In this document: piece by piece, positions 5,581-18,682 of the stretch
How positions within the stretch are numbered: position 1 is the stretch's first letter
Layout: each line of letters starts with the position of its first letter
From: Schizochytrium sp. TIO01
Taxonomy: Eukaryota; Protista; Bigyra: Labyrinthulomycetes
Length of the DNA: 64,000 nucleotides
NCBI GenBank assembly: GCA_004764695.1
Contig: SMSO01000006.1
Location: forward strand, 1,379,859 to 1,443,858
Direction of reading: 5' to 3'
Program-made: the position numbers and the translations under genes
Notes under the pieces: generated by a model
Database searches by the model: none
What the model was told of the DNA's origin: nothing
The model's input: the letters and a program-made list of their open reading frames with translations, nothing else

Positions 5581-6004
5581 GGAATGAAAAGTGGCCCAAC
5601 AAGGGTAGTTGAGGCACTTAACCTAACGACGGCTCATCTCATCTCATCTCGTGTTTGAGATTGAGATAGAGACAACTAGGTAGTTAGAAGTGCCTGTATA
5701 GCGGTATCTCCTAGTAGTCTTTGTCAACAATCCAGATTGAAGAGCGCCCATTGGTAGACGTGCTCGTTGTGAGCGGCGTGTTGCTCCTGAGGAGCCTTCA
5801 CAGCAGCAGGCACGCTTTGAAATCGAGCTAGATTTGTTCGACGCTCCAGATTGATAAATTGCTGGACGTTGCTTTGTTCAAAGCTTGAATTTCAAACTTT
5901 CTGAAACTCACGAACTCAAAAATTCAAATCAGAATCTGAGTTCGTTCAAACCTCAAACCAAACGAGACAGGCTCGGAGGGGAAGGTCTTGCACCTACGCC
6001 TGCA

Positions 6005-9000
6005 ATGTCGCAGACCCCTACGCGCCCAGAGGCCTCACCTCCTTCTGTCCGCTCCGACGCGCCCACAGCCTCCTCTAACCTTGGCAACGCACAAGACAGC
6101 GTCCGTGACCATTCTCAACAGGATGACAAGGCCTCGCCTGCTGGCGCTCAAGCTGGCCAGGAGCCCTCCGAGGAGGGCGTTCACAGCTCCTCGAGGGTTC
6201 TGGAGACCCGCTCTTTACGTATGGAGGACTCCCCTTTCTCTGTGAACCAGGACCTGCGCCGCAAGGAGGTCCGAGCGGCGAATCGGAGCATGCGGCGGCA
6301 AAGTCTGCACTTCGCTCCCACGGTGGTGCCTGCTAAGCTGAGCGTGACCGACTTAAAACCAGCTTTCAACAAGATCTTAAAGATGCTTCGCGACCGAGGC
6401 TGGAAAACTCCACGCACCGCAAACGGCTGGGCATACCTCAAACCGCATGTGAAGAAGCCCACGGTCGGTGCCGAGGGCATCGACATGTGGGATACTGCGG
6501 AAGGTGTGTTGCAGCACCTCATCGAAGAGCGCCACGTCCAATACGACGGTTTCTTTGAAGAATTTTTTCAGCAACACCCTGACCAGCTTGCAATTATGAG
6601 CTCGCCACCAAGGTCTGAGGATGAACACTCTTCTGTTATTCACGAGCTGCTCCAAGATGATGAGGACCAAGAGAATAACAAGGAAGATGAGCCTGCCGAG
6701 AACGCATCAGGAGCGAAGGCAAATACGGATACGAAGAAACCCAACGAAATCGAATCTCATGATGCAGAAAGTATCGGGACTTCATTGAGGGAGAAGACCA
6801 CCAAACGAAGGAGAAGGTCAAGCGGGGGACACTGGGAACCTGGTCGTGATGGAGGCACCGGAAGCGAAGATGAGGGAAGAGCAGAAAGATCGAGGAGGCG
6901 AAGGTCAACGCACGGAATTCCCAGCCCAGGATCTGACGAGCAAGAACTTGGAACATGGGCATGGACGGCACTAATCAGTGAAGGATGGCACCATACAAGA
7001 GGTGACACCCTACACGCGTGGTGCTACCTGAAGCCAGAGGTCCGTCATAAAGGTGATGGTGTCCAGGATGAAAATATGTTTATGGGCGAGCGAATGCTTG
7101 GCCGCTATCTGCTAAACCACCGCCCAGACCTTGTCGACGCATGGCGCCTTGAAAAGGAAGCTGCAGAAGAGGCTCGCCAGGAAGAAAAAGAGATGAATCT
7201 TGCTGGCAAAACCCGTCGCAGACTGAAATCAAAGATGAAAAATTCGAAGGGTAGTATTGTAGGGATCCAGAAGAGCCGGGGAAAAAATAATTCATCATCA
7301 CGTGGTAAAGGCAAGAAAAAAAATATTTCTCGCCGCAAGGCCCAGAAAAGGCGCTCCCAACCTTGGTTTAAGAACTTCAAGTTTAATCGAGATGTCAAAT
7401 TTGGGACTCTATGGCCTCGCATTCTTAGAGATAAATTCAACTGGAAATATTTTCGCTTGCGTGGGGTTCGTGGACTCACGGGTTCGTGGGCATATGCTCT
7501 TCCCGAGGTAGCAAGTGTCACGGAAGGCAAAATCGGGGAGAACATGTGGGTTGTCGAAAGTGAAATTGTTGAATATGTTAAAAATAATCCTGAATTGGCT
7601 GCAAAGGCAGAAGCTATCATCTTGGAGCAGCTTCGTCGAGAGTTTGGAAGTGATGATGATGAGGATGAGGATGAGCACGAGAATGAAGACGAGGATGAAG
7701 ACGAGGATGAAGATGATGATGAAAAGAGTGTCAGTAAAACTTCCAAGCGAGCGGCATCTCAGAATAAAAGTACCACGAAAAAACGCCGACCCTACAACGA
7801 ATTGAACGATGGTGGCTTGGTTGATCAACAAGTAGCAAAAAAGTTCCCTCTTGTATTCGCCGCCACAACGGAGGCCATTTGGGGAGTCTTGCGAACAGAG
7901 CTGTCGTGGCGGCACTTTCCAACGAAAACTCTTCACAGCAGCTGGATGTACTGCCCACCAGATGTCACTCGTGCAACTGCTATCATAGACCAGAATATGT
8001 GGTACCACAGAGATCTTAAAGAGATGGTGTTGAAGAACTCACATCTTGCAAAACAAGTTGAGAGATTTTTCGAAGAGGAAGCTCAAGAGGAAGTCCGCCA
8101 ACGGCAAATGGCGAAAGAGTGGCGAAAGGAAGAAGCTCGAAGACGAGCTGCTATTCAACATGAAGCTAAAAGACGCCAACAGGAACGTGCTAAGGCACAA
8201 ATCCAGGCTGAAAAGGCCGCAAAGGCTTTAGCAGCAAAACGAGAAATAGAGCGCCGGCGTGCTCGAGAACTCCAATCTCAGCTGCTCAAAGAATTAAAGG
8301 ATGAACTCAAGGTTCGTCAGGTTGACACGGCTGGCTTTCAAACTTTGTGGAGCATTCTCCGTTTCGAATACGGTTGGACCCACTTCCCGTATACTGGCCT
8401 CATTAGTAGCTTTGTTTATGCACTACCCGAAGTAACAAAGGCATCTGAGGGTACTATGGACGAAACGATGTGGGCTGACGAAGATAAATTGGTCGCTTAC
8501 GTTCGAGAAAGCCCCATCTGGGCGGAGCGTTGCGAAGCGTCTCTTCGTGAATCTTTACGTGAGGCCTATGCTCAAAAGATGGAAATTACAATGGAAGAAC
8601 TTCTTGAATTGGAGCAAGGAAACACCGCGCCATCGCCAAAACAGAAGGTACAATCTGTGGTGAAGCAAAAACACAACTTGAAACAACAAAGACAAACTCA
8701 GCAACATTCAAAAGATAAAGAGTCAGTTGATCGTGTCTCTGAGACTTTGAAGATTGGTCATATAGACATCACAAATGATCCCAAGATCAGCGCAGGCGCC
8801 TCTGAAGGCAGTGTACAAGCCTTTACCGAGGCAAATGAGCAACACGGTACAGAAGATGAAGACGATCTTCATCCTGTGGAGGAAAGAGAGGTTGAAGAGG
8901 AACACGATATCAAGGACATCGCTGACACGAATATGTGTGATGGTGACCAAAATGATTCCCACATGGAAGACGCCGATGTAGATGATACTAACACCAACCT

Positions 9001-12000
9001 TGATAAATCTTCAAATCACGGTCATTCAATAAATAAAGAAGATGAAATACTGGATGATGCGGAAGTGGATTTTGATGATCAGGAGGACTCTGATGAAGTC
9101 ATGGATCCACGCGAGCGAGCAGATAAAATTATCGACAAAGCAACTAGTTTCAACGAAGTTTTTCCACACCTGCAAAAACTTGGTTGGTCGCAGAAGCCAA
9201 ATTTTGAAGGTGATGGAGGATCGAAACGTTATTTCTTGCCAGGTGCCCTCCCGAAAGAAGCTACACTGGGTAAAGACATGTGGACAGACCCTATGGAAGC
9301 CCTCGATTTCGTTAAGACGGACCCCACTTGGCGAAAGCATCTGCAAGACTTATTCGCAAGCTCCGATTTCCATGACGAAGTTGACTCCTCGTCTGACGAG
9401 ATCGAGCGAGATGACCCAAATCTTCGCATTCGCGCTCGCCGTGTCCTTGACAAGGCAGACTTTAATCAAGTGTGGGACATTCTTAAATCTAGGCATTGGA
9501 AGTGGTTCTACAATACAGGATTAGAGAGCGCCTGGGTATATGCTATGCCTCACGTGAAGACGAAGCGTATTGGAAAGATTGATGTTGATATGTTTGACTC
9601 AGAAGAGAGCCTTGTTAAGTTCGCCAAAAGTGATAGCCATACTCGGCAGCTTTGTGAAGACATGCTGTATGACCTGCTTTATGAAAAGCAACTGCTAGAT
9701 CGTGAGCGCGATGCAATTCATAATGATGATGAAGACCTCATTGATGATGACGAAAATGAAGATGAGGATCAATACAGCGAAGAAGAGGATGAACTATTAG
9801 ATGAAGATGAGGAGCGTGATGCTCATGACTCTGAAGAAGCTGATGATTCCGACGAAGATGATAACAGCCTGCATTCTGCTCTGTATGGCCAAGCAATTGA
9901 ACGAGCACACGACGGAGATCTCCAAAGTATTCTTCTCGATCAATTCAATTGGAAACATGTTAAGAGCACAGACCCGAATTCTGAACTTCAATACTGCTAT
10001 GTCAAACCTGCAGATAAGTATGGAGCACCTGAGACCTTGGACTTTCTAAGTGACATTAAGAACAGGGTCTTAAGCGACGCAAACTTAAGAGAGGACGTCG
10101 CTCGGAAACTCATCGATAAGTGGCGGCGCACACAGGACCCTAATCTTCAAGCTTTGCGGGGCTGGGAGGAGGTTTTTGACCAGTCTAGAAAGCATGCAAG
10201 GAGGAACATTTCCCAAAGCTCTGCTGCGAGATTACGCACGCGTAAGACAATCCAGCACAGCAGCTCAATTGTTTCTTCTTTGAAACGCAGAAGGAGTTAT
10301 TCAAGGAGGCGAAGTACGCAAGGTGCTAATAATTCAAGTCGAGGGCAGGATGACGACGATGATGATCTCGAAGACAACAGCGCAGGAAGCATTGGGGGGG
10401 ACGAGAACGATGTTCTTGGAGGAGCTACATTTAATATGGTATGGCCTATTTTAAAGGAACTTGGCTGGCACTACTATCCTTACAGCGGCCTTGAAGGTTC
10501 CTGGCGTTATGCCCTTCCTGAGGTTGAAAAGGCTAGAGATTGCAAAATCAATGAAAACACTTGGGTAAAAGAAAGTGATGTGGTTGATTACGTTCGGAGC
10601 GACCCTGAATGGGCCGAGAAAGTACGTTCCCATCTCAAAATCGTGGTAGAAAGTAGTGAATCTGGTGATTCGGATTCAGCCAATGAAGCAATCGAGGCTG
10701 GAAGCGATAACTATGTCAGCGATAGCGCCGAGGAAGAAGACCGCGACGATCTCAGCAAAAACAGCCTCGACGAAGATGAAAATAATGAAAGTGCAAATAA
10801 TTCTGAGGATGGCAATGGCGATGAAGGGAGCTCGGATGAAGAAGGCAGTGATGGCGCTTCCTTTCAAGGTGATCTCAGTGACCGCAAAAGCATTATGAGT
10901 TATCTATTGTCTAAGGGTTGGCATCACAAAAAGGGGCGGGGCCTCGTGTCTCATTACTATCTTGCACCGCACGTGAAAAGTAAAACGGATGGTGTTCTTG
11001 GTGAAAGCATATTTGAATCCGAGGAAGCAGTATGCGAGCATTTCATCAAAACCCATCAACCTAAAATCAAGTCCAAAAATCATGGAAAGAAGGCAAGGGG
11101 CACGCGCCAGATGTCAACTGCAAAGCTACCTGCACGATCAGCCAAACGCATCAGGCTTGAATCACCTATTTCTCAAGATACGCAGCGGATTTGGAGCTCA
11201 ATGAAACGAAAGGGTTGGGAGCAAGTGGGTGAATGGTACGTCAGCCCCGATGCTGCCCCAACCAGGAATAGCACAGGGGAGAAGGTTTTCAAAGAGGATC
11301 ACTGCACCGTCTTCCGCTCGCTTAAACGAGCTGCTGCTCACTTTATCATGAAAAACCAGCATACTAGCCCTATTCACGTCAGCCGAGGCATCAAGCGCCG
11401 TCGATCTGAGGTTCAACGTGCCGAAGAAGAGGAAGAAGAGATGTTGAGCGGTGATCATGATGACGAAAATGAAGTAGTCGTAGACTCAGATAACGAGTCC
11501 AACAATATGGACGAGAATGATGAACAAAATGACGACGAGGACGATGAGGATGACGAGGACGAAAATGAAGATGATGAAGACAATTTACCTGATTATATCT
11601 CCGAGGATAACTTTTGGGATGAGGTTTGGCCATACCTTGAAAAGAATGGCTGGAAAAGGATCAAAAACAAAAGGAAAGGGGCCAAACGTGGTTTTTTGGC
11701 TCCTAGCGGTGCTCTCGCAAACGGAGTCAGTATGCGTTTTTCCCGTGTTACGGAGGTTTGTGAGTTTCTTCGTACTCAACAAGAGTTAAGACAACATCAA
11801 AGCTCTCCTTCATCATCTTCTTCGTCAGAGGATGAGGATAGGGTAAGATTTGATGAGTACGTAAAAACACTGCGAACAGTGCAACCAACACAAGATACTT
11901 TTTGGACCACTTTTCACCCAATTATCAAAGCTGCAGGGTGGACGTACAAATACGGAACTGGAATTCACAAAGAGCTATTCTTTGCTCCTGGTGTCACCCG

Positions 12001-14293
12001 TCAGAGGGATGCAGTTGAAGGCGAAACACGAATAAGCTCCTGCGCAGCAATGTGCAAGTGGATTAAACTTCACAGAGCTACGATTGTTCAAAGCTTGAGA
12101 GAGGCACTTCTTACCGACAGTGAAGATGAGGATGAGGATGACGAGGATGGAGTGGATGAGGAAGAGGACGAGGAAGGCGTCGATGTTGACAAGACCAGCT
12201 TGCCAGGGAAATTTCACCCGTCTGAGGTAGATAACAACGGGGTTCGGGTCTCAAATATCATTTCTGACGATGAGTTTGAAGACGCACGGGGCCGCGCTGA
12301 ATACAGTTCTAGACGTCTTTTACGAGATGACGCGAAGGGAGGAACTCATGGGCTTACTCAAAGGGAAGGAGATGCCATGGATCAAGAATCAGATGCTGAG
12401 TTAAGTAATCATGACTACTTTGGCCGCGAAGATAACAATATTGTCAACGGTGAAAGTGATGATGACATATCTCATGCTGGATCTGAAAATGCGCATCGCA
12501 ACCCAAACAGGCTTCGCCGATTGCAGCGGACTGGCCTTGCGAAGCGCTACATTCACCCAAGTGGTAGAGAATTGCATGAGGAATACGAACGTACCCGAGA
12601 CGTAACGAGCAAACTGAAACTGCAGTGGCTAGGTCGCGAAGAGCAAATCGACTTCCTCGCGGGGCTTATGGGCCCACGCCACATGCAGACGTCCCACATG
12701 CTTTTACATGGTGATACAGCCACAGGGAAAACTGGTGTAATTCGCGCGCTGATAACTGCGCTTGAATATCCTTTTGCCGCCGTAGACTGTGCTGAATGCT
12801 ATGCACCAAGCATTTTGTTCCAGAGACTTCTCTCTCAGATGCCTCGAAGCAGAACAGAAGCAATCGACTCTATGCAAAACCAAATTTTAGATGCATCTGC
12901 TGCTACTAATACTACAAACGATAGGAGCAGGTCGAACGACCCTGCCTCAGGCTTTGGGCACGAGGAAACATATGAGGATCGCAAGAACCGCAATATCGCA
13001 GAGAATCGCGCAGTACTGGAAAGCCTAGGCATTGTGTTGTCTCCTAATCTTCAAGAGAGAAGTGGGGTACAGGGAATGGACTCTGAGCCGTATGTGGATG
13101 ACGAGGAAGCAAGAGACAGTGATGAGCCATCTGAGTTGGGTGAAGGTGTTTCACTCCTCTCTCGCAAGGTTCAAACGCTTGAGCGCTGTGTTACTATGCG
13201 CGACTTCGTGCTTGAGGTATCGCGACGTTTGCAGCCAGCTCGTGAAGCAAAAGAAACATTTTACTTGCTTCTTGAAAATGCTGCTCGAATAGAAGAACTC
13301 AGCTCGAATCTGCTCCCAGCCCTCTTAGAGTTAGAAAGGTCTTCTGGGTGCAATATTTGTATTATTATGACTTCTACAGAGCTTTCTGAGTCTATGAGTC
13401 TAGTTCTGCATAACGTCCCAGTTTGCTTTGTTTGTTTTCCTGCATACTCACAAATGGAGCAACGCAAAATCATAGCGCTTCAGCTGAGCAAGAAGGTTGG
13501 TAAACAGTATAGCGAGATGGTGGTGCGGCAGGTTGTCAATGCGGTGGTGCAGACCTTTACATCACAGGTGCGCGATCTTCGTGAAATGTCTCGCATTTGT
13601 TTTGACCTTTGGGAAAAGGTTGTATCTAAACCAGGTTTTGCAGAAAATCCGCAAGGAATTTTGCGTGTTGCGCTTGAAGGCCGTGTTGGCCTAACCTTTA
13701 AGATGCTGTATCATCATGACTTTGAGCTTGATCCACGTGCTGAAAACCCAACTGATGGTGCCCTAGAGCGTTGGGAACGTGATGAGGTAAAACGAGCTGC
13801 AGATCTACCTTACGATTCAAAGCTTGTTTTGTTGGCATCCTTTCTAGCGTCATACAATAGTCCGGATCACGACCGTGTTCTATTTGGAAATGCAAGAAAG
13901 CTATCGCAACGCCAAAAGCATGGCGAAGCTTTGACTGCGCGAAACATTAAGAATGCAAACGCAGGCCAACGGCTGTTGGGCCCCAAGGTCTTTCCTCTCG
14001 AGCGACTTGTCAATTTGTACCGCGCTCTTGTCAACATGATTGACTCTAGTGCACCTTTGTCAGATTCTACAAACTCAAGTAATAAGCAAAATATGTCATC
14101 AGCTTTGCAGCGCCAACCGACAAGGCAGCTTCATAAGCAAGTGGCATCTTTGATTAGTGCTGGTCTTTTGACTCGCGTCTCGCGCCAAGATGAATTGGAC
14201 ATGGTGAAGCTGAAATGTAATGTTCCAAATGAGTTTGCCGAAGCTCTTTCTGAAACGGTGAAGCTTGATCTGCTTAAACTTCTCGAAAGCTAA
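6005..14293 (+). CDS. ORC5: Origin recognition complex subunit 5 with a very large repeat-containing N-terminal extension (~2760 aa)
   Basis: First in-frame ATG is at 6005 (the track start at 5885 is TTG). The C-terminal ~560 aa contain GREEQI, Walker A HGDTATGKT (G at 12710), VDCAECY and RCVTMRDFV. ORC5-specific C-terminal motifs follow: LPYDSKLVLLASFLASYN, LLGPKVFPLERL, QVASLISAGLL, KLKCNV. Confidence 0.9.
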   Translation: MSQTPTRPEASPPSVRSDAPTASSNLGNAQDSVRDHSQQDDKASPAGAQAGQEPSEEGVHSSSRVLETRSLRMEDSPFSVNQDLRRKEVRAANRSMRRQSLHFAPTVVPAKLSVTDLKPAFNKILKMLRDRGWKTPRTANGWAYLKPHVKKPTVGAEGIDMWDTAEGVLQHLIEERHVQYDGFFEEFFQQHPDQLAIMSSPPRSEDEHSSVIHELLQDDEDQENNKEDEPAENASGAKANTDTKKPNEIESHDAESIGTSLREKTTKRRRRSSGGHWEPGRDGGTGSEDEGRAERSRRRRSTHGIPSPGSDEQELGTWAWTALISEGWHHTRGDTLHAWCYLKPEVRHKGDGVQDENMFMGERMLGRYLLNHRPDLVDAWRLEKEAAEEARQEEKEMNLAGKTRRRLKSKMKNSKGSIVGIQKSRGKNNSSSRGKGKKKNISRRKAQKRRSQPWFKNFKFNRDVKFGTLWPRILRDKFNWKYFRLRGVRGLTGSWAYALPEVASVTEGKIGENMWVVESEIVEYVKNNPELAAKAEAIILEQLRREFGSDDDEDEDEHENEDEDEDEDEDDDEKSVSKTSKRAASQNKSTTKKRRPYNELNDGGLVDQQVAKKFPLVFAATTEAIWGVLRTELSWRHFPTKTLHSSWMYCPPDVTRATAIIDQNMWYHRDLKEMVLKNSHLAKQVERFFEEEAQEEVRQRQMAKEWRKEEARRRAAIQHEAKRRQQERAKAQIQAEKAAKALAAKREIERRRARELQSQLLKELKDELKVRQVDTAGFQTLWSILRFEYGWTHFPYTGLISSFVYALPEVTKASEGTMDETMWADEDKLVAYVRESPIWAERCEASLRESLREAYAQKMEITMEELLELEQGNTAPSPKQKVQSVVKQKHNLKQQRQTQQHSKDKESVDRVSETLKIGHIDITNDPKISAGASEGSVQAFTEANEQHGTEDEDDLHPVEEREVEEEHDIKDIADTNMCDGDQNDSHMEDADVDDTNTNLDKSSNHGHSINKEDEILDDAEVDFDDQEDSDEVMDPRERADKIIDKATSFNEVFPHLQKLGWSQKPNFEGDGGSKRYFLPGALPKEATLGKDMWTDPMEALDFVKTDPTWRKHLQDLFASSDFHDEVDSSSDEIERDDPNLRIRARRVLDKADFNQVWDILKSRHWKWFYNTGLESAWVYAMPHVKTKRIGKIDVDMFDSEESLVKFAKSDSHTRQLCEDMLYDLLYEKQLLDRERDAIHNDDEDLIDDDENEDEDQYSEEEDELLDEDEERDAHDSEEADDSDEDDNSLHSALYGQAIERAHDGDLQSILLDQFNWKHVKSTDPNSELQYCYVKPADKYGAPETLDFLSDIKNRVLSDANLREDVARKLIDKWRRTQDPNLQALRGWEEVFDQSRKHARRNISQSSAARLRTRKTIQHSSSIVSSLKRRRSYSRRRSTQGANNSSRGQDDDDDDLEDNSAGSIGGDENDVLGGATFNMVWPILKELGWHYYPYSGLEGSWRYALPEVEKARDCKINENTWVKESDVVDYVRSDPEWAEKVRSHLKIVVESSESGDSDSANEAIEAGSDNYVSDSAEEEDRDDLSKNSLDEDENNESANNSEDGNGDEGSSDEEGSDGASFQGDLSDRKSIMSYLLSKGWHHKKGRGLVSHYYLAPHVKSKTDGVLGESIFESEEAVCEHFIKTHQPKIKSKNHGKKARGTRQMSTAKLPARSAKRIRLESPISQDTQRIWSSMKRKGWEQVGEWYVSPDAAPTRNSTGEKVFKEDHCTVFRSLKRAAAHFIMKNQHTSPIHVSRGIKRRRSEVQRAEEEEEEMLSGDHDDENEVVVDSDNESNNMDENDEQNDDEDDEDDEDENEDDEDNLPDYISEDNFWDEVWPYLEKNGWKRIKNKRKGAKRGFLAPSGALANGVSMRFSRVTEVCEFLRTQQELRQHQSSPSSSSSSEDEDRVRFDEYVKTLRTVQPTQDTFWTTFHPIIKAAGWTYKYGTGIHKELFFAPGVTRQRDAVEGETRISSCAAMCKWIKLHRATIVQSLREALLTDSEDEDEDDEDGVDEEEDEEGVDVDKTSLPGKFHPSEVDNNGVRVSNIISDDEFEDARGRAEYSSRRLLRDDAKGGTHGLTQREGDAMDQESDAELSNHDYFGREDNNIVNGESDDDISHAGSENAHRNPNRLRRLQRTGLAKRYIHPSGRELHEEYERTRDVTSKLKLQWLGREEQIDFLAGLMGPRHMQTSHMLLHGDTATGKTGVIRALITALEYPFAAVDCAECYAPSILFQRLLSQMPRSRTEAIDSMQNQILDASAATNTTNDRSRSNDPASGFGHEETYEDRKNRNIAENRAVLESLGIVLSPNLQERSGVQGMDSEPYVDDEEARDSDEPSELGEGVSLLSRKVQTLERCVTMRDFVLEVSRRLQPAREAKETFYLLLENAARIEELSSNLLPALLELERSSGCNICIIMTSTELSESMSLVLHNVPVCFVCFPAYSQMEQRKIIALQLSKKVGKQYSEMVVRQVVNAVVQTFTSQVRDLREMSRICFDLWEKVVSKPGFAENPQGILRVALEGRVGLTFKMLYHHDFELDPRAENPTDGALERWERDEVKRAADLPYDSKLVLLASFLASYNSPDHDRVLFGNARKLSQRQKHGEALTARNIKNANAGQRLLGPKVFPLERLVNLYRALVNMIDSSAPLSDSTNSSNKQNMSSALQRQPTRQLHKQVASLISAGLLTRVSRQDELDMVKLKCNVPNEFAEALSETVKLDLLKLLES
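6355..12065 (+). repeat. About 13 dispersed copies of a ~55-65-aa protein module (F-x2-[VI]-W-x2-L-x3-GW ... [WY]-x-Y-x2-P-x-V ... G-x2-[GD]-x-[ND]-M-[WF]-x2-E-x2-V-x2-[YF]-V) inside the ORC5 extension
   Basis: Approximate copy starts: 6355, 6950, 7393, 7865, 8330, 9143, 9455, 9917 (degenerate), 10424, 10889, 11183, 11609, 11897. Example pair: FQTLWSILRFEYGWTHFPYTGLISSFVYALPEV..GTMDETMWADEDKLVAYVRESP and FNMVWPILKELGWHYYPYSGLEGSWRYALPEV..CKINENTWVKESDVVDYVRSDP. Confidence 0.9.
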
Positions 14294-14839
14294 AACTCCG
14301 TGCCGTAAGGAAAGTGAAGTGACATAATTAATCAAACTCTCATTATAATTAATATTTTGATTGATTATAAACTCGTTCAGCCCCATATGTATATATATAT
14401 TGGTTCGTTTGTTTGTTAGCAAGGAGAGTAATGATAGATAGTGGAATCAAGCGCTATAATTTACGTTGTTTCTTTGTAGGGCAGTTCCGGAAATATACAA
14501 ATAAGAAATATTTTTTTTTTTTTTAAATTTCATAGAAGCCTCTTGTGTGAATGTTATACAATGGAACTTGACAAACACAAGCAACCCCTCCCTTCCGACG
14601 TTTCACGCGCGCGATAAGACAATTTTATAAAAATTATAACATGAAAATTTACATACGGGCCAAAGTTCAAATAATTGGTACTAGAGGTTATAAAGCAAGG
14701 ACAATACCAGGTCCTGCTTCTTACACAAATTCCGTCTATAAATATAAAAGAAGATTTTTTGGACACGATCTCACTTTCCACAGAACAATTATTGCATGCA
14801 TCACAAGAGGTTCTGTCGCGCAGTGAGTTTTGTTTTGTT

Positions 14840-17800
14840 TTACCCAAGGGATGTTGGTGGCTGAGCGCTCTTTGGCCGCGGAGGTATTTGTTCTGGAGAG
14901 AGGCCTAAATCAACTCCCATCAGGGCATTTGTAGAGTCTTTCCCCTGAAGAGTTCCTGATCTTCGTCGGATCGCAGTATTAGCGAAAAGAGGTGAATTGC
15001 GACGCATACGTGTCCTGGGCAAAGATGCAAATGCTGCCGTCGTAGAATCTTCTGGAGAGGCAGTGCCATCGCTAGTGGAGACCCGAGAAGGTAGAAGTGG
15101 CGAATCCGGCTGCCAAGCATCGCGGGGGGATGATGCTGTCGATGAATTGTCATCGCTTGTACGCACAGCAGCAAGACGGTTTTGAAGTTCTTTGACAAGT
15201 TGCTTACTCTCAGTAAGCTCGCGTTCCAAAGCATCAATACGCGTCCGTGACTGCTCCGTCTCGTGTCTACGTACAGATTCAGTCGCAGCAATGTGTGATA
15301 ACAAAGTGTCGGTGGCGTCCTCCGATGCAACTTGAGCTTGGGATTCTTGCCAACGCAATGCACGAATACGGGCAGATGAGTCTACGTGGTTGGCCTCATC
15401 GGCATCTCGGCTTGATAACGACGTTGCAGATTCTGTATAATGGATGCCATTTTGCAAGACAAAGGTATCATTTACTGAGGATAAAGTCGAGCCAGACACC
15501 ACCCTAACAATATCTCCAAATGATTTAGACGGTGGGACCTGATAATCAGCACCGGATTGGTTCAACCCTGGTGTCCGGCAGCTGCCATCTTCGCTAAACT
15601 CTGTTCCGGCGGATGACGCCTCTTCAATACCTGATCGATGACGAATATTTATTAGTGCAAGGGATGTAAGCTTTGCGCATCGAGTTTCCGCGCGATTATG
15701 GCGCATAGGTTGGTGTGGAAGTGTTGCCACTGTACTAGCGAGCACCAAATCCCGGCGTAACGGTGCTAAGCGTCCAGCGTGGTTCGGGTTATCAGCCCAG
15801 GTCCCCGGGACACCGCGATGAAATTTATCCAAAGAAATCTTACATACTAATGGTGGTTTTTCACAAAGCTGGGGCCGTTGTAAGAGTGATCGCAATTTTG
15901 CTGTGCGAGGATTGTCAGGACTCGCGGGCACGCTATCTTCTTCAACAATGAATCGAGGAATACCCATGTGATCCAGGGCCTCGCGAACTTTGGTAACTGA
16001 TGTAAACAACTCGTTCATTTCTTCTGGACTGAAGATAACCAGACGATCTATGGCAAGGCGTGTAGCTGACATAGAATATCCCAAACCAGTGAGCATGTCA
16101 TTGAGCATTCGAGCAAGGGGTGACATCTTGCGTTTGACAGGGTGCACGGATTGCTTACGCCAGATACTCACAAGGCGATCAAAAAGGGTCGGGTTGTAAG
16201 CAGAAACCTGGCGGGTGATGAGGTCACAGAACAATCGACGAGAAACAAAGGAATCCACAAAGGATTGGTAAGCCACAGGCAAGTCCGCCACAAAGGTAAC
16301 CGGGTCAAATCCTCGCTTAGTCGTCATAGTCCTAGCTGTCGAGCTAGCACTGCCAAGGCTACTGAGACTGCAAGTACTTGCTGATGAGCTAAGGTGCGAG
16401 CAAGACGTCACAGGACCCATCACATTTGGACTTGTTCCCCGTCCACGAATAGAATGTGAGGTAGTAGACCCCAAGGATGCAGTGTCAGACGCATCTGCAT
16501 ATGGAGAAGTTGATGAAGAGCTAGAAAGAGGGACTAGATGGAATTTCAGGTGCGAGAAGAGAGTCAAATACAATTCGAGCATTGCAATACGAACGTGGTC
16601 GATCCACACACGTTCATCCGCAGATTCATCGAGAATATTCGACTCCGTTGATGAATTAGACGTTGCAGAATTCTTGCTTCCACTTTGTGCAGAATTTACA
16701 GAATATGGGAAAGAGAATGCAGTGCTTCCTGAGTAAGTACTTTGTGTTGTAGTCGAGTTCTGCTTACCAAAGCCGTTGTGGTGAGGGACCTGGAGATTTT
16801 GCCGTGTTTGCGAGGGGACACTACTAGATGCTGAAAGATTTGGCGAGCCTGCACGAGGTGATGTGCATGGGGAAGTTAAAGTGTCAGGAATAATTGTTGA
16901 AAGCTGGGCCAAGAGATTTGTTCGAAGGGGCTCTGGGATGGTTGGAACAGGCTTAAGGGCACTTACGTCAGTCTCTTCATCTTCGGTATCATCATGGTTG
17001 AGGTGTTGCTGGTGAAAATTGTTTGATGATGATGAGGTAAGCCGGCGAAGCAAACCGGGTGTCCTGGATACAACTTCATATTGACCGGCATCAATGTTTG
17101 CTAAAACAAAGCGCTTCGCAGTTTGCCGCTGATACGCACAGTTTGCATGCAAACGCAACTTGAATTCGCCCGTGTCAGTACAGCACACACCAACAAGAAA
17201 AGGGGAGGAAGCCTGAAGCATGTGCCATTCAGAACGAGGCAAAAGAGGTACATATAAACTTTGCCAAACGAACGGAAACAGAATGGCCCTAAACGCTTCA
17301 GCTATGGGAACAAGACGTGAAGCGTCTGTACTGTGAAGAATAACGGAGTCCTCCGCGAGCAGGTGCTCTAAGATTTCTAGCACAAGTTTTGGCCGAAACG
17401 ATTGAAATAGAGTAAGAAAGCAGCGATCATCTACCATTGGAAGGTGGCGCATTCGAGGTGTACAGATACATAGGCGTCGTTTGAAAATAGGAGAACGTTC
17501 CCAAGTCATGCGCATGCAACGATCTGATGGGGGCACTGGAACTTCTGCGATGAGTGAGCGTACGAAAGGTTCTATGATAACATGGTTGCACAGGTCACGA
17601 TCGCAGAGACTGGCGAGTTCAAGAAGAGCAGTCTCCATAAAGGTCATCACTGGGTGCCGAGAAACCGCACATATATATTGGTTTGCATCTAGCACTTGCG
17701 TCACACTACAATATAATAAAACACCGGTAGCATCAGGAAGAACAAACGAACATGTAGAGACCGTATTACCCCCTACATATGATGGACGCTCTTTGCTATT

Positions 17801-18682
17801 GGCACAAGATGTTGCACCTGCTGACATCGTGGAGCCCGCGGATTTCTGTGTTGTTGAAGAGAGTGGCGGGCTGCTGGTTTCAGCCGACCCTTTAAATTGC
17901 GAATAGTATTTTGCAGTGGTCAATGGCTCAGTCAAAGTGCCAAAGATATCTCTCAGACACATGAGGAGGAGCGCTTCGGGAAATGTATAAGGTGCAACTG
18001 CAGGGAAGCGCTGCCTAACCCAAAAGTTCTCTGCATGGAGCTCCACTACGCAGAAGAAATCAATCACTCGTGACTGTGCCATTACTGTCTTCGTCGACGT
18101 CATCGTTGCTGATGTTTCTGACGTGCTCGCGCTTGCCGACGAGGCTGCGCTCGTCGTGGCCCTGCGTGTCAGTGCATGGGTCGCTCCCGCTGGCATTCCC
18201 TGCTGCCAGCGTTGTCGTTTGCCCCCTGCTGCGCCGGCCCAATCGCAGCCTCCGGTGCTGCTGCTTTTGATCAAGCTTTGTCCTACTGCTATGTTCTTCC
18301 CACTTGCTTCTGATTGCCGCACTTGCCCTACTACTTGCAACTTTGCCTGAGACTGAGATTCCTGCTGCTGCTGCTGCTGCTGCTGTCGACCTTGCTGTTG
18401 TTGCACTGCCCTCGGAGACCTGCTTTGCCCCGCACTCTCTCCTGCTAGGGCATCTCCAGTTTCCACAACCTCTAGTTTCGAGGCAATGCTGCTTTGCACG
18501 GCCTCTTCTGCATAACTATTATTTTCGCACACGCTGCTCCTTAATGAGGAAGTGGTACCGCATGGGACGGTTAGAGTCTCTTCATTTTCTTGATAAGTAT
18601 CTAGCCCCCCCAAGGCCTCTCGAAACACACCTGCTGGCGCAGACGCATGCTTTATTTTCCCAATCTCGTGTATTCCACCCAT
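14840..18682 (-). CDS. DENN-domain protein (putative Rab GEF)
   Basis: uDENN-like IDFFCVVE and SFVLPDATG; cDENN motifs AICAVSRHP-like, LVLEILEHLLAEDSVILHS..RLVPIAEAFRAILFPFVWQSLYVPLLP..LQASSPFLVGV; dDENN-like FDPVTFV..YQSFVDSFVSRRLF. Confidence 0.9.
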   Translation of the reverse strand: MGGIHEIGKIKHASAPAGVFREALGGLDTYQENEETLTVPCGTTSSLRSSVCENNSYAEEAVQSSIASKLEVVETGDALAGESAGQSRSPRAVQQQQGRQQQQQQQQESQSQAKLQVVGQVRQSEASGKNIAVGQSLIKSSSTGGCDWAGAAGGKRQRWQQGMPAGATHALTRRATTSAASSASASTSETSATMTSTKTVMAQSRVIDFFCVVELHAENFWVRQRFPAVAPYTFPEALLLMCLRDIFGTLTEPLTTAKYYSQFKGSAETSSPPLSSTTQKSAGSTMSAGATSCANSKERPSYVGGNTVSTCSFVLPDATGVLLYCSVTQVLDANQYICAVSRHPVMTFMETALLELASLCDRDLCNHVIIEPFVRSLIAEVPVPPSDRCMRMTWERSPIFKRRLCICTPRMRHLPMVDDRCFLTLFQSFRPKLVLEILEHLLAEDSVILHSTDASRLVPIAEAFRAILFPFVWQSLYVPLLPRSEWHMLQASSPFLVGVCCTDTGEFKLRLHANCAYQRQTAKRFVLANIDAGQYEVVSRTPGLLRRLTSSSSNNFHQQHLNHDDTEDEETDVSALKPVPTIPEPLRTNLLAQLSTIIPDTLTSPCTSPRAGSPNLSASSSVPSQTRQNLQVPHHNGFGKQNSTTTQSTYSGSTAFSFPYSVNSAQSGSKNSATSNSSTESNILDESADERVWIDHVRIAMLELYLTLFSHLKFHLVPLSSSSSTSPYADASDTASLGSTTSHSIRGRGTSPNVMGPVTSCSHLSSSASTCSLSSLGSASSTARTMTTKRGFDPVTFVADLPVAYQSFVDSFVSRRLFCDLITRQVSAYNPTLFDRLVSIWRKQSVHPVKRKMSPLARMLNDMLTGLGYSMSATRLAIDRLVIFSPEEMNELFTSVTKVREALDHMGIPRFIVEEDSVPASPDNPRTAKLRSLLQRPQLCEKPPLVCKISLDKFHRGVPGTWADNPNHAGRLAPLRRDLVLASTVATLPHQPMRHNRAETRCAKLTSLALINIRHRSGIEEASSAGTEFSEDGSCRTPGLNQSGADYQVPPSKSFGDIVRVVSGSTLSSVNDTFVLQNGIHYTESATSLSSRDADEANHVDSSARIRALRWQESQAQVASEDATDTLLSHIAATESVRRHETEQSRTRIDALERELTESKQLVKELQNRLAAVRTSDDNSSTASSPRDAWQPDSPLLPSRVSTSDGTASPEDSTTAAFASLPRTRMRRNSPLFANTAIRRRSGTLQGKDSTNALMGVDLGLSPEQIPPRPKSAQPPTSLG

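What the first reader, a model, noticed from the sequence alone, without database searches (positions are those of the whole stretch)
6005..14293. Giant ORC5 carrying a ~2200-aa arm with ~13 copies of an MBD-like module: candidate new origin/chromatin-targeting system
Seen: one uninterrupted 8.3-kb frame joins a complete ORC5 (from ~12610) to ~13 diverged copies of a ~60-aa W..L...GW...Y..P...G...F/W..E..V..Y module, spaced by long acidic and basic linkers. Established: ORC5 is normally ~430-550 aa with no accessory domains. ORC targeting is instead provided by add-ons on other subunits, such as the nine AT-hooks of S. pombe Orc4 and the BAH domain of Orc1. Inference: the module spacing resembles the methyl-CpG-binding (MBD) fold (GW...Y-x-x-P-x-G...F-R-S..E...YL). 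The best matches are the copies at ~11183 (GWEQ..WYVSP..VFRSLKRAAAHF) and ~11609 (GWKRIKNKRKG..FLAPSG..RFSRVTEVCEFL). From memory, similar modules occur in uncharacterised stramenopile proteins, but I know of no described fusion to ORC. The arm could be a multivalent DNA or nucleosome reader that selects replication origins in this lineage.
Basis: partly seen in the sequence, partly recalled or inferred. Interest (0 to 1): 0.92.

Follow-up and report, generated by a model that had tools for sequence, protein, structure and literature searches.

The report
Giant ORC5 with 13-module arm
A marine protist (thraustochytrid-like stramenopile) makes its only ORC5 replication-origin subunit as a 315-kDa protein with 13 copies of an uncharacterised ~70-residue domain, and related stramenopiles carry arrays of the same domain on ORC1/Cdc6 or ORC2, so it is probably a lineage-specific way of anchoring the origin recognition complex to chromatin.

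Summary
Window 6005-14293 (+) is one stop-free 2762-codon frame. It has 13 copies of a ~65-75-aa module followed by a complete ORC5 (AAA+ from nt 12623, ORC5_C 98.9 bits). It is the only ORC5 found in the 64-Mb genome. Gene-sized contigs (8.4-8.8 kb) in four probable RNA assemblies cover the laid stretch, arm to ORC5, without joints. Orthologues (Hondaea fermentalgiana and three metagenome or database proteins) keep 12-14 modules in the same order.

New here: the module belongs to Pfam DUF7650. Of the 150 best family representatives, 30 are pre-replication AAA+ proteins: 8 ORC5-type, 4 ORC2-type (two giants with 14-18 modules), and 18 ORC1/Cdc6-type (oomycetes, one diatom). BRCT, SAP and PWWP also occur as partners.

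The MBD reading is only weakly supported. There was no Pfam, PDB-sequence or Foldseek hit. MBD structures reach Z 2.3-4.1, and protein-language-model neighbours are MBD clusters at 0.77-0.79. No conserved Arg or Asp columns exist, so canonical methyl-CpG reading is unlikely.

Best reading (inferred): a multivalent chromatin or DNA tether for ORC. I found no paper on it. I class it as a new variant of a known kind.

The parts
6005..14293 (+). Complete intron-free CDS of the giant ORC5. 2762 aa, 315.4 kDa, pI 5.1.
   Evidence: Contigs in four runs cover 8600 to 14287-14489. By arithmetic they begin at ~5732-5980.
6359..6562 (+). Module 1 (aa 119-186), pI 7.4
   Evidence: Positional orthologue in Hondaea P0004 m1, P0001 m1 and P0002 m1.
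6944..7171 (+). Module 2 (aa 314-389), pI 5.5
7394..7630 (+). Module 3 (aa 464-542)
7862..8080 (+). Module 4 (aa 620-692)
8075..8320 (+). E/K/R/Q-rich charged stretch (aa ~691-772) between modules 4 and 5. Possibly a single alpha-helix or coiled coil; that is inferred from composition only.
   Evidence: Similar charged stretches are visible in P0001 and P0002.
8327..8554 (+). Module 5 (aa 775-850), the copy that was folded. Order of elements: helix, beta-hairpin, loop with a short strand, two helices.
   Evidence: AF2 pLDDT 93.5
9140..9364 (+). Module 6 (aa 1046-1120)
9452..9676 (+). Module 7 (aa 1150-1224)
9911..10114 (+). Module 8 (aa 1303-1370), degenerate copy
   Evidence: Weak in local HMM searches (i-E 0.06). 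E 1.1e-12 in the genome search with A1. Its positional orthologue is Hondaea P0004 m7.
10421..10648 (+). Module 9 (aa 1473-1548), the best-scoring copy
10877..11080 (+). Module 10 (aa 1625-1692), basic (pI 9.5)
   Evidence: Orthologue in Hondaea P0026 m1 at 54% identity.
11174..11380 (+). Module 11 (aa 1724-1792), divergent, carries an insertion, basic (pI 9.7)
   Evidence: Weak in local HMM searches. E 3.1e-12. Orthologue in P0026 m2 at 56% identity.
11606..11812 (+). Module 12 (aa 1868-1936), basic (pI 10.1). It is the only window copy that touches Pfam DUF7650, and it is the most MBD-like copy.
   Evidence: E 8.4e-4; AF2 pLDDT 83.4; VIA AtMBD6 Z 4.1
11894..12106 (+). Module 13 (aa 1964-2034), basic (pI 9.4)
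   Evidence: Orthologue in P0026 m3 at 57% identity.
12107..12622 (+). Acidic linker (28% D/E) joining the arm to ORC5. It holds a single internal Met, aa 2125 at nt 12377.
   Evidence: Contigs cross it without a joint.
12623..13366 (+). ORC5 AAA+ domain. Walker A GxxxxGKT lies at 12710-12736. It carries a lineage-conserved insertion with the motif at 12971-13033.
   Evidence: Pfam AAA_16 6.8e-16
13526..13618 (+). ORC5 lid, a weak match
   Evidence: PF21639, 16.8 bits, below the 27.1 cut-off
13805..14278 (+). ORC5 C-terminal domain
   Evidence: PF14630 E 4.4e-28, 98.9 bits

Best explanation
Shown: this is the organism's single ORC5 gene. It is transcribed and translated as one 2762-aa protein. 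The C-terminal 560 aa form an ordinary ORC5 (AAA+, lid, ORC5_C) that would sit in the ORC ring. The N-terminal 2200 aa form an ancient, position-conserved array of 13 small alpha/beta modules of the DUF7650 family, separated by disordered acidic and basic linkers.

Inferred: the array is a multivalent tether that holds ORC on chromatin. The four basic modules next to ORC5 (modules 10-13, pI 9.4-10.1) are the likeliest DNA contacts. The nine neutral-to-acidic modules with poly-D/E linkers more likely contact histones or other basic chromatin proteins. Many weak contacts would add up to avidity and so help decide where ORC resides. In other stramenopile lineages the same array sits on ORC1/Cdc6-type or ORC2 subunits, which suggests it serves the complex as a whole rather than ORC5 specifically. 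The module may derive from the MBD fold, but it lacks conserved Arg or Asp columns, so canonical methyl-CpG reading is not expected.
For: The frame is intact and ORC5 is complete. It is the only ORC5 match in the 64-Mb genome.

Twenty runs from 9 studies hold 96-98% of the gene's sampled words. In four runs guessed to be RNA (assemblies of 31-39 Mb against a 64-Mb genome), single contigs of 8410-8764 nt run from 8600 to 14287-14489. By arithmetic they start at ~5732-5980. They have no joints, and gaps in the convergent intergenic region separate them from the neighbouring gene's contig. One strain variant is an in-frame 18-nt insertion in an acidic linker.

Orthologues P0001, P0002, P0003 and Hondaea (P0004 plus P0026) carry 12-14 modules. 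Nearly every window module matches best the module at the same position in another species, not a paralogue within the same protein.

The module folds confidently (pLDDT 93.5 and 83.4). The family has 420 representatives at E<=1e-3. Of the top 150, 30 are ORC5-, ORC2- or ORC1/Cdc6-type. Other partners are BRCT, SAP, PWWP and HA.

In this genome ORC1 (with BAH), Cdc6 and ORC2 are of normal size and show no module. Charges are partitioned along the arm.
Against: There is no experimental or direct computational evidence of DNA or chromatin binding. The arm as a whole is strongly acidic (net charge -130, pI 5.06), unlike known DNA-binding ORC add-ons. Only one W and one P are near-invariant, and both are probably core residues. 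Fold searches found no significant relative whose function could be transferred. The RNA nature of the runs is a guess, and contigs cannot exclude an extra internal start. The census of the top 150 is biased towards multi-copy proteins.
Confidence: 0.5

Rival explanations
1. The arm is a protein-protein scaffold, histone-chaperone-like element or condensate-forming region. It would recruit replication, repair or cohesion factors, or regulate ORC (for example through the cell cycle or nuclear retention), and would not choose origins or bind DNA.
For: The arm has net charge -130 and long poly-D/E linkers, and nine of the 13 modules are neutral or acidic. The module co-occurs with BRCT phospho-protein-binding domains. 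No DNA-binding fold matched significantly.
Against: The four ORC5-proximal modules are basic. SAP and PWWP are also partners. The weak MBD and dsRBD-like structural hints point to nucleic-acid binders. Placement on three different ORC/Cdc6 subunits fits a whole-complex tether as well as it fits a scaffold.
Confidence: 0.3
2. The modules are true MBD-superfamily domains that read a DNA modification (5mC or 6mA) or a specific sequence, so that origins are set by an epigenetic mark.
For: For module 12, VIA gave AtMBD6 Z 4.1, rmsd 2.1 A, 42 of 48 residues aligned, 24% identity. SETDB2, MBD4 and MBD2 MBDs gave Z 3.2-3.6. Module 5 also gave MBD hits at Z 2.3-2.6 and TAM domains in Foldseek's weak tail. 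Atlas named neighbours of two modules are MBD clusters at 0.77-0.79. hhalign of the family against this genome's one MBD aligned the GW...Y..P segment in the expected register, P 0.009.
Against: All scores lie below the tools' own noise bars. dsRBDs score as well or better (Z 4.0-4.5), and the RecA C-terminal domain is best for module 5 (Z 5.3). No module hit Pfam MBD at E<=10, and no MBD appeared in PDB profile searches. No Arg or Asp column is conserved in A1 or A4. From established knowledge of MeCP2 and MBD2, methyl-CpG contact depends on two Arg fingers and an Asp.
Confidence: 0.15
3. There are two products or an artefact. Either the arm and ORC5 are separate proteins (internal promoter, processing), or the junction is an assembly or annotation chimera.
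For: GenBank's Hondaea annotation has ORC5 as a 992-aa model and the arm as a separate 'partial' 1481-aa model. Contigs cannot exclude an additional internal transcription start.
Against: The frame is continuous. Contigs in independent assemblies from four studies span the junction without joints, and 20 runs from 9 studies hold the stretch. The same fusion stands in P0001, P0002, P0003, L022 and L023. The two Hondaea models are colinear, overlapping pieces of one orthologue. Only one Met lies between the last module and the AAA+ domain.
Confidence: 0.05

Closest known systems
S. pombe Orc4 with nine AT-hooks (from established knowledge)
   Same: A repeated small module on the N-terminus of a non-Orc1 ORC subunit, supplying multivalent chromosome attachment.
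   Different: AT-hooks are ~10-residue basic peptides that bind the AT-rich minor groove. Here the units are folded ~70-aa alpha/beta domains in a net-acidic 2200-aa arm on Orc5, and binding is untested.
ORC1 BAH domain and plant ORC1 PHD insertion (PMC7058166 for the distribution of architectures)
   Same: Chromatin-reader add-ons on an ORC subunit, patchily distributed among lineages.
   Different: Those are single domains of known fold on ORC1. This organism keeps a BAH-ORC1 as well and adds the 13-module arm on ORC5.
Pfam DUF7650 (PF24662)
   Same: Module 12 matches it (E 8.4e-4). So do 35 of 120 other family proteins, best E 2.7e-12. In P0005 the DUF7650 match (aa 2387-2448, 43.4 bits) covers the stretch that BLAST aligns to window modules 6 and 9.
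   Different: It is a domain of unknown function. Most window copies fall below the Pfam threshold. No paper mentions it.
Methyl-CpG-binding domain (MBD/TAM)
   Same: The order of motifs GW ... Y-x-x-P ... F/W-x-S/D-x-x-E/D-hydrophobic-x-x-Y/F is shared, as is a beta-sheet-plus-helix core. There are weak structural and language-model hints.
   Different: The module has an extra N-terminal helix and a ~8-10-residue insertion after the Pro. It has no conserved Arg fingers or Asp, and no significant sequence, profile or Foldseek match.
dsRBD and RecA C-terminal domain folds
   Same: Alpha-beta-beta-beta-alpha topology. Best VIA scores were RecA CTD Z 5.3 for module 5 and dsRBDs Z 4.0-4.5 for module 12.
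   Different: Scores are below the level the tool regards as meaningful, sequence identity is 2-15%, and no family motifs are shared.

Membership tests
ORC5 (origin recognition complex subunit 5) | ORC5 C-terminal domain (Pfam PF14630) above the curated cut-off | tested here: met
   98.9 bits against a 28.2 cut-off, aa 2601-2758
ORC5 (origin recognition complex subunit 5) | AAA+ domain with Walker A GxxxxGK[ST] | tested here: met
   AAA_16 E 6.8e-16, aa 2207-2454. The GKT motif is at aa 2236-2244. The Walker B region reads LLLENA where orthologues have LDNA.
ORC5 (origin recognition complex subunit 5) | ORC5 lid domain (PF21639) | tested here: inconclusive
   16.8 bits, below the 27.1 cut-off
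ORC5 (origin recognition complex subunit 5) | Sole orthologue in a genome that encodes the other ORC/Cdc6 subunits | tested here: met
   One ORC5 match in G000. ORC2, ORC1 with BAH, and Cdc6 are present. ORC3, ORC4 and ORC6 were not searched.
ORC5 (origin recognition complex subunit 5) | Assembles into the ORC ring and binds origin DNA | not testable with these tools
   Needs biochemistry.
Pfam DUF7650 (PF24662) | Match to the family HMM above the 27-bit cut-off | tested here: inconclusive
   The whole protein scores 13.9 bits, and only module 12 matches, at E 8.4e-4. The Pfam HMM finds nothing in a six-frame scan of the genome. By transitivity, 35 of 120 homologous proteins match, best E 2.7e-12, and P0005 scores 43.4 bits on a stretch that aligns to window modules.
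Methyl-CpG-binding domain (MBD, PF01429) | Match to the MBD profile | tested here: not met
   No PF01429 hit on any of the 13 modules at E<=10. The genome's own canonical MBD is found by the same HMM at 32 bits. hhalign of modules against that MBD gave Prob 0.25% and 4.4%. No MBD appeared in PDB profile searches at E<=10.
Methyl-CpG-binding domain (MBD, PF01429) | MBD fold (three- or four-stranded sheet packed on one helix) | tested here: inconclusive
   Foldseek found nothing at E<1. VIA gave MBD entries at Z 2.3-2.6 for module 5 and Z 3.1-4.1 for module 12, the best being AtMBD6 at 2.1 A over 42 residues. These are tied with dsRBDs.
Methyl-CpG-binding domain (MBD, PF01429) | Conserved Arg fingers, Asp and Tyr that contact methyl-CpG (from knowledge of MeCP2 and MBD2 complexes) | tested here: not met
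   In A1 and A4 only one W and one P are conserved at 90% or more, and no Arg or Asp column reaches majority. The register to MBD is not established, so this rests on there being no conserved basic column at all.

The most novel reading that the evidence does not exclude
DUF7650 is a stramenopile-specific, MBD-derived chromatin or DNA reader that was captured independently by ORC5 (labyrinthulomycetes), ORC2 and ORC1/Cdc6 (oomycetes, diatoms). Arrays of up to 18 copies would specify replication origins by multivalent reading of a DNA modification, histone mark or sequence feature. That would be a new origin-selection principle with one array-bearing subunit per lineage.
Probability: 0.2. Interest if true: 0.85.

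Novelty: new variant of a known kind. Interest (0 to 1): 0.66.

Why it matters
How ORC finds origins outside yeasts and animals is largely unknown. Known solutions are lineage-specific add-ons: Orc4 AT-hooks in S. pombe, the ORC1 BAH domain, and a PHD insertion in plant ORC1. Here an uncharacterised folded domain is tied repeatedly to three different pre-replication subunits across stramenopiles, a group that includes oomycete crop pathogens, diatoms and industrial thraustochytrids.

This gives a concrete, testable handle on origin specification in that group. The tests are to tag or delete the arm in a transformable thraustochytrid and to assay module binding. It also gives DUF7650 a functional context. 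Deposited gene models truncate or split the gene (Hondaea: 992 aa plus a 'partial' 1481 aa), so annotation pipelines mishandle it.

Tried and rejected
- PDB sequence-profile searches with 13 and with 31 modules gave only chance hits: repeated RecA fusion constructs at 0.7 bits per domain, and picornavirus VP2 at E 0.03 over a motif.
- Foldseek against PDB found nothing for either model.
- The search for homologous proteins with the genome's own MBD fragment, meant to build an MBD alignment for a profile-profile test, found no candidates. The profile comparison was therefore limited to a single MBD sequence.
I used the full-length ORC5 alignment instead.
- BLAST against this genome's ORC1 and Cdc6 did not settle whether the oomycete and diatom module-plus-AAA+ proteins are ORC1 or Cdc6 orthologues; the scores are nearly equal.
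- The Pfam DUF7650 HMM finds nothing in a six-frame scan of this genome.
- The C33 module-bearing exon sits in a small multi-exon gene with no recognisable partner domain.
- Earlier scan notes near the window concern an unrelated Fanzor locus, and a word search found nothing.
Full report
**Observation**

The window holds one open frame from 5885 to 14293 on the + strand. The first ATG is at 6005, giving 2762 codons with no stop. Such a frame cannot arise by chance in ~47% GC DNA.

Pfam places a complete ORC5 at the C-terminus:
- AAA_16 at aa 2207-2454, E 6.8e-16.
- ORC5_C at aa 2601-2758, 98.9 bits against a cut-off of 28.2.
- A weak ORC5 lid match.

An HMM built from only three modules found seven more copies at i-E 2.7e-5 to 2.6e-20, and iteration gave 13. 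A six-frame search of the genome scored all 13 at E 1.3e-28 to 3.1e-12. Linkers alternate between acidic (up to 49% D/E) and basic (up to 36% K/R).

**Is it one gene and one product?**

The window lies in a 64.07-Mb, 37-contig assembly (C5:1379859-1443858). The ORC5 domain matches that genome once only, so no second short ORC5 was found.

Twenty public runs from nine studies hold 96-98% of the gene's sampled words. I laid four runs from four studies on 8600-14599. Their assemblies are 31-39 Mb, about half the genome, and the tool guesses they are RNA.

In each run a single contig of 8410-8764 nt covers 8600 to 14287-14489 with no joint. By arithmetic from the record positions, the contigs begin at ~5732-5980, just upstream of the ATG. 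Two runs have no depth at 14400-14599. In another run the neighbouring convergent gene is a separate contig starting at 14539. This gene-by-gene pattern is what transcript assemblies give.

It rules out an assembly chimera. It shows the arm and ORC5 on one gene-sized contig. It cannot exclude an additional internal start. Only one Met (aa 2125) lies between the last module and the AAA+ domain.

Strain differences include an in-frame 18-nt insertion in an acidic linker, plus 10 non-synonymous and 5 synonymous substitutions. Ten of the fifteen lie in linkers.

**Conservation**

Searching with the ORC5 part at full-length size limits found three other giant ORC5 proteins:
- P0001, 2443 aa, deposited under 'Durusdinium trenchii'.
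- P0002, 2206 aa.
- P0003, 1968 aa.

All three carry the same modules. The closest named relative is Hondaea fermentalgiana, a thraustochytrid. Its ORC5 model (GBG29580.1, 992 aa) is 59-61% identical over the ORC5 part. A separate 'partial' model (GBG33824.1, 1481 aa) is colinear with arm residues 76-1683. The gene is therefore split or truncated in that annotation.

P0001, P0002 and P0003 have 13-14 modules, and the two Hondaea pieces together have 12. For nearly every window module, the best match is the module at the same position in another species, not a paralogue in the same protein. The array is therefore old and each position is individually maintained.

Among 76 ORC5 loci from metagenomes, only L006 (13 modules) and L022/L023 (6 modules) have modules upstream. 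Several loci with 10 kb of upstream sequence have none.

**What the module is**

AlphaFold gave confident models: module 5 at pLDDT 93.5 and module 12 at pLDDT 83.4. The order of elements is helix, beta-hairpin, loop with a short third strand, then one or two helices.

A profile of the 13 copies found 420 representative proteins at E<=1e-3, most with several copies. Pfam recognises 35 of 120 of these as DUF7650 (PF24662), best E 2.7e-12. Module 12 touches the same model at E 8.4e-4. In P0005 the DUF7650 match lies on a stretch that aligns to window modules.

Named members come from three stramenopile groups:
- Oomycetes: Aphanomyces, Albugo, Globisporangium, Pythium, Lagenidium, Thraustotheca.
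- Diatoms: Thalassiosira exigua, Cyclotella cryptica.
- Thraustochytrids: Hondaea.

**The main new result: partners**

Among the 150 best representatives, 30 are pre-replication AAA+ proteins:
- 8 are ORC5-type.
- 4 are ORC2-type. Two are giants: P0005 (2883 aa, 16-18 modules) and P0006 (2219 aa, 14 modules), with RecA-like_ORC2 at E ~1e-41.
- 18 are ORC1/Cdc6-type, with 3-12 modules in front of the AAA+, lid and winged-helix domains.

Whether the last group is ORC1 or Cdc6 could not be settled. Other partners are BRCT (about 9 of 120), SAP, PWWP, HA and DUF7028.

In the window's own genome, ORC1 (679 aa, with BAH), Cdc6 (534 aa) and ORC2 are of ordinary size and show no module. Outside ORC5, the module was found only in a BRCT-like 1402-aa ORF on C13 and in a small exon on C33. 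Because the array sits on different subunits of the same complex in different lineages, it probably serves the complex as a whole.

**MBD or not**

Evidence against:
- No module hits Pfam MBD at E<=10. The same HMM does find this genome's one canonical MBD.
- PDB profile searches list no MBD.
- Foldseek finds nothing.
- hhalign against the genome's MBD gives Prob 0.25% with 13 modules and 4.4% (P 0.009) with 597 family modules, although it aligns GW...Y..P in the expected register.
- No Arg or Asp column is conserved.

Evidence for, all below the tools' own noise bars:
- VIA-align lists MBD structures for both models. For module 12 these are AtMBD6 (Z 4.1, 2.1 A, 42 of 48 residues, 24% identity), SETDB2 (Z 3.6), MBD4 (Z 3.4) and MBD2 (Z 3.2).
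- The only named language-model neighbours of modules 5 and 12 are MBD clusters at 0.77-0.79. One of those clusters is shared with DUF7028, which is also a partner of the module.
- Against this, dsRBDs score the same or better (Z 4.0-4.5), and the RecA C-terminal domain is best for module 5 (Z 5.3).

I put a distant MBD relationship at roughly even odds. Canonical methyl-CpG reading is unlikely.

**Mechanism**

Shown: one gene-sized contig and one frame; a conserved, position-specific array; and family-wide association with ORC/Cdc6.

Inferred: the arm tethers ORC to chromatin by many weak contacts. Charge is partitioned. Modules 10-13, next to ORC5, are basic (pI 9.4-10.1). Modules 1-9 are neutral to acidic, and the arm as a whole has net charge -130. 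I therefore expect the proximal four modules to touch DNA and the distal nine, with their poly-D/E linkers, to engage histones or other basic proteins. The rival reading, a protein scaffold or regulator without any role in origin choice, fits the acidity and the BRCT partners nearly as well.

**Novelty**

Full-text searches found no paper mentioning DUF7650 or PF24662, or an extended ORC5. The one survey of ORC architecture across eukaryotes discusses BAH, PHD and Cdc6_C on ORC1 only. The proteins exist in databases, partly truncated, and the domain exists as a DUF. I class this as a new variant of a known kind: an ORC subunit with a lineage-specific targeting appendage.

**Limits**
'Thraustochytrid-like' rests on Hondaea being the nearest named relative.

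Noticed in passing
window 11533: Two of four runs (X9, X16) carry an in-frame 18-nt insertion coding six D/E residues in the acidic linker between modules 11 and 12. Linker length varies among strains while the frame is kept.
   Followed up: partly
window 12971-13033 (aa 2323-2343): The ORC5 AAA+ domain carries a long insertion. Its core motif (YE..KNRNI.ENRAVLESLGI) is conserved in all the giant orthologues. Its function is unknown.
   Followed up: no
L002:4933-9141 (G000 C13:4326932-4331140, +): A 1402-aa ORF with one strong and one weak module and a weak BRCT_2 match (E 6.8e-4). It is the only other multi-domain module protein found in this genome.
   Followed up: partly
L082:4910-5062 (G000 C33:1190909-1191061, -): A single module (E 3.4e-12) in a 98-aa open stretch that looks like one exon of a small multi-exon gene. 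The flanking ORF pieces have no Pfam match. A TPR-kinase gene lies upstream.
   Followed up: partly
L005:1501-1665 (G000 C32:2282840-2283004, -): The genome's single canonical MBD (PF01429, 32 bits) sits inside a 2899-aa open frame, another giant chromatin protein.
   Followed up: no
P0001 (database protein): The 2443-aa orthologue is deposited as Durusdinium trenchii (a dinoflagellate) ORC5. Its 13 modules are colinear with the thraustochytrid proteins. It may come from a labyrinthulomycete contaminant in that assembly; this was not tested.
   Followed up: no
L003/L004 (G000 C33:693774-694816, -): ORC2 of this genome matches in two separate open frames (207 and 382 aa), which implies an intron. 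The genome therefore has introns, yet the 8.3-kb ORC5 has none.
   Followed up: no
window 14840-18682 (-): The convergent neighbour is a 1280-aa ORF. In run X5 it is a separate 3847-nt contig ending ~300 nt past its stop, which leaves an uncovered ~200-nt gap to the ORC5 contig. The protein was not analysed.
   Followed up: no
upstream of the window (same genome, ~4.9-7 kb before window start): Earlier scan notes describe a Fanzor2/IS607-type locus there. It is unrelated to this finding.
   Followed up: no
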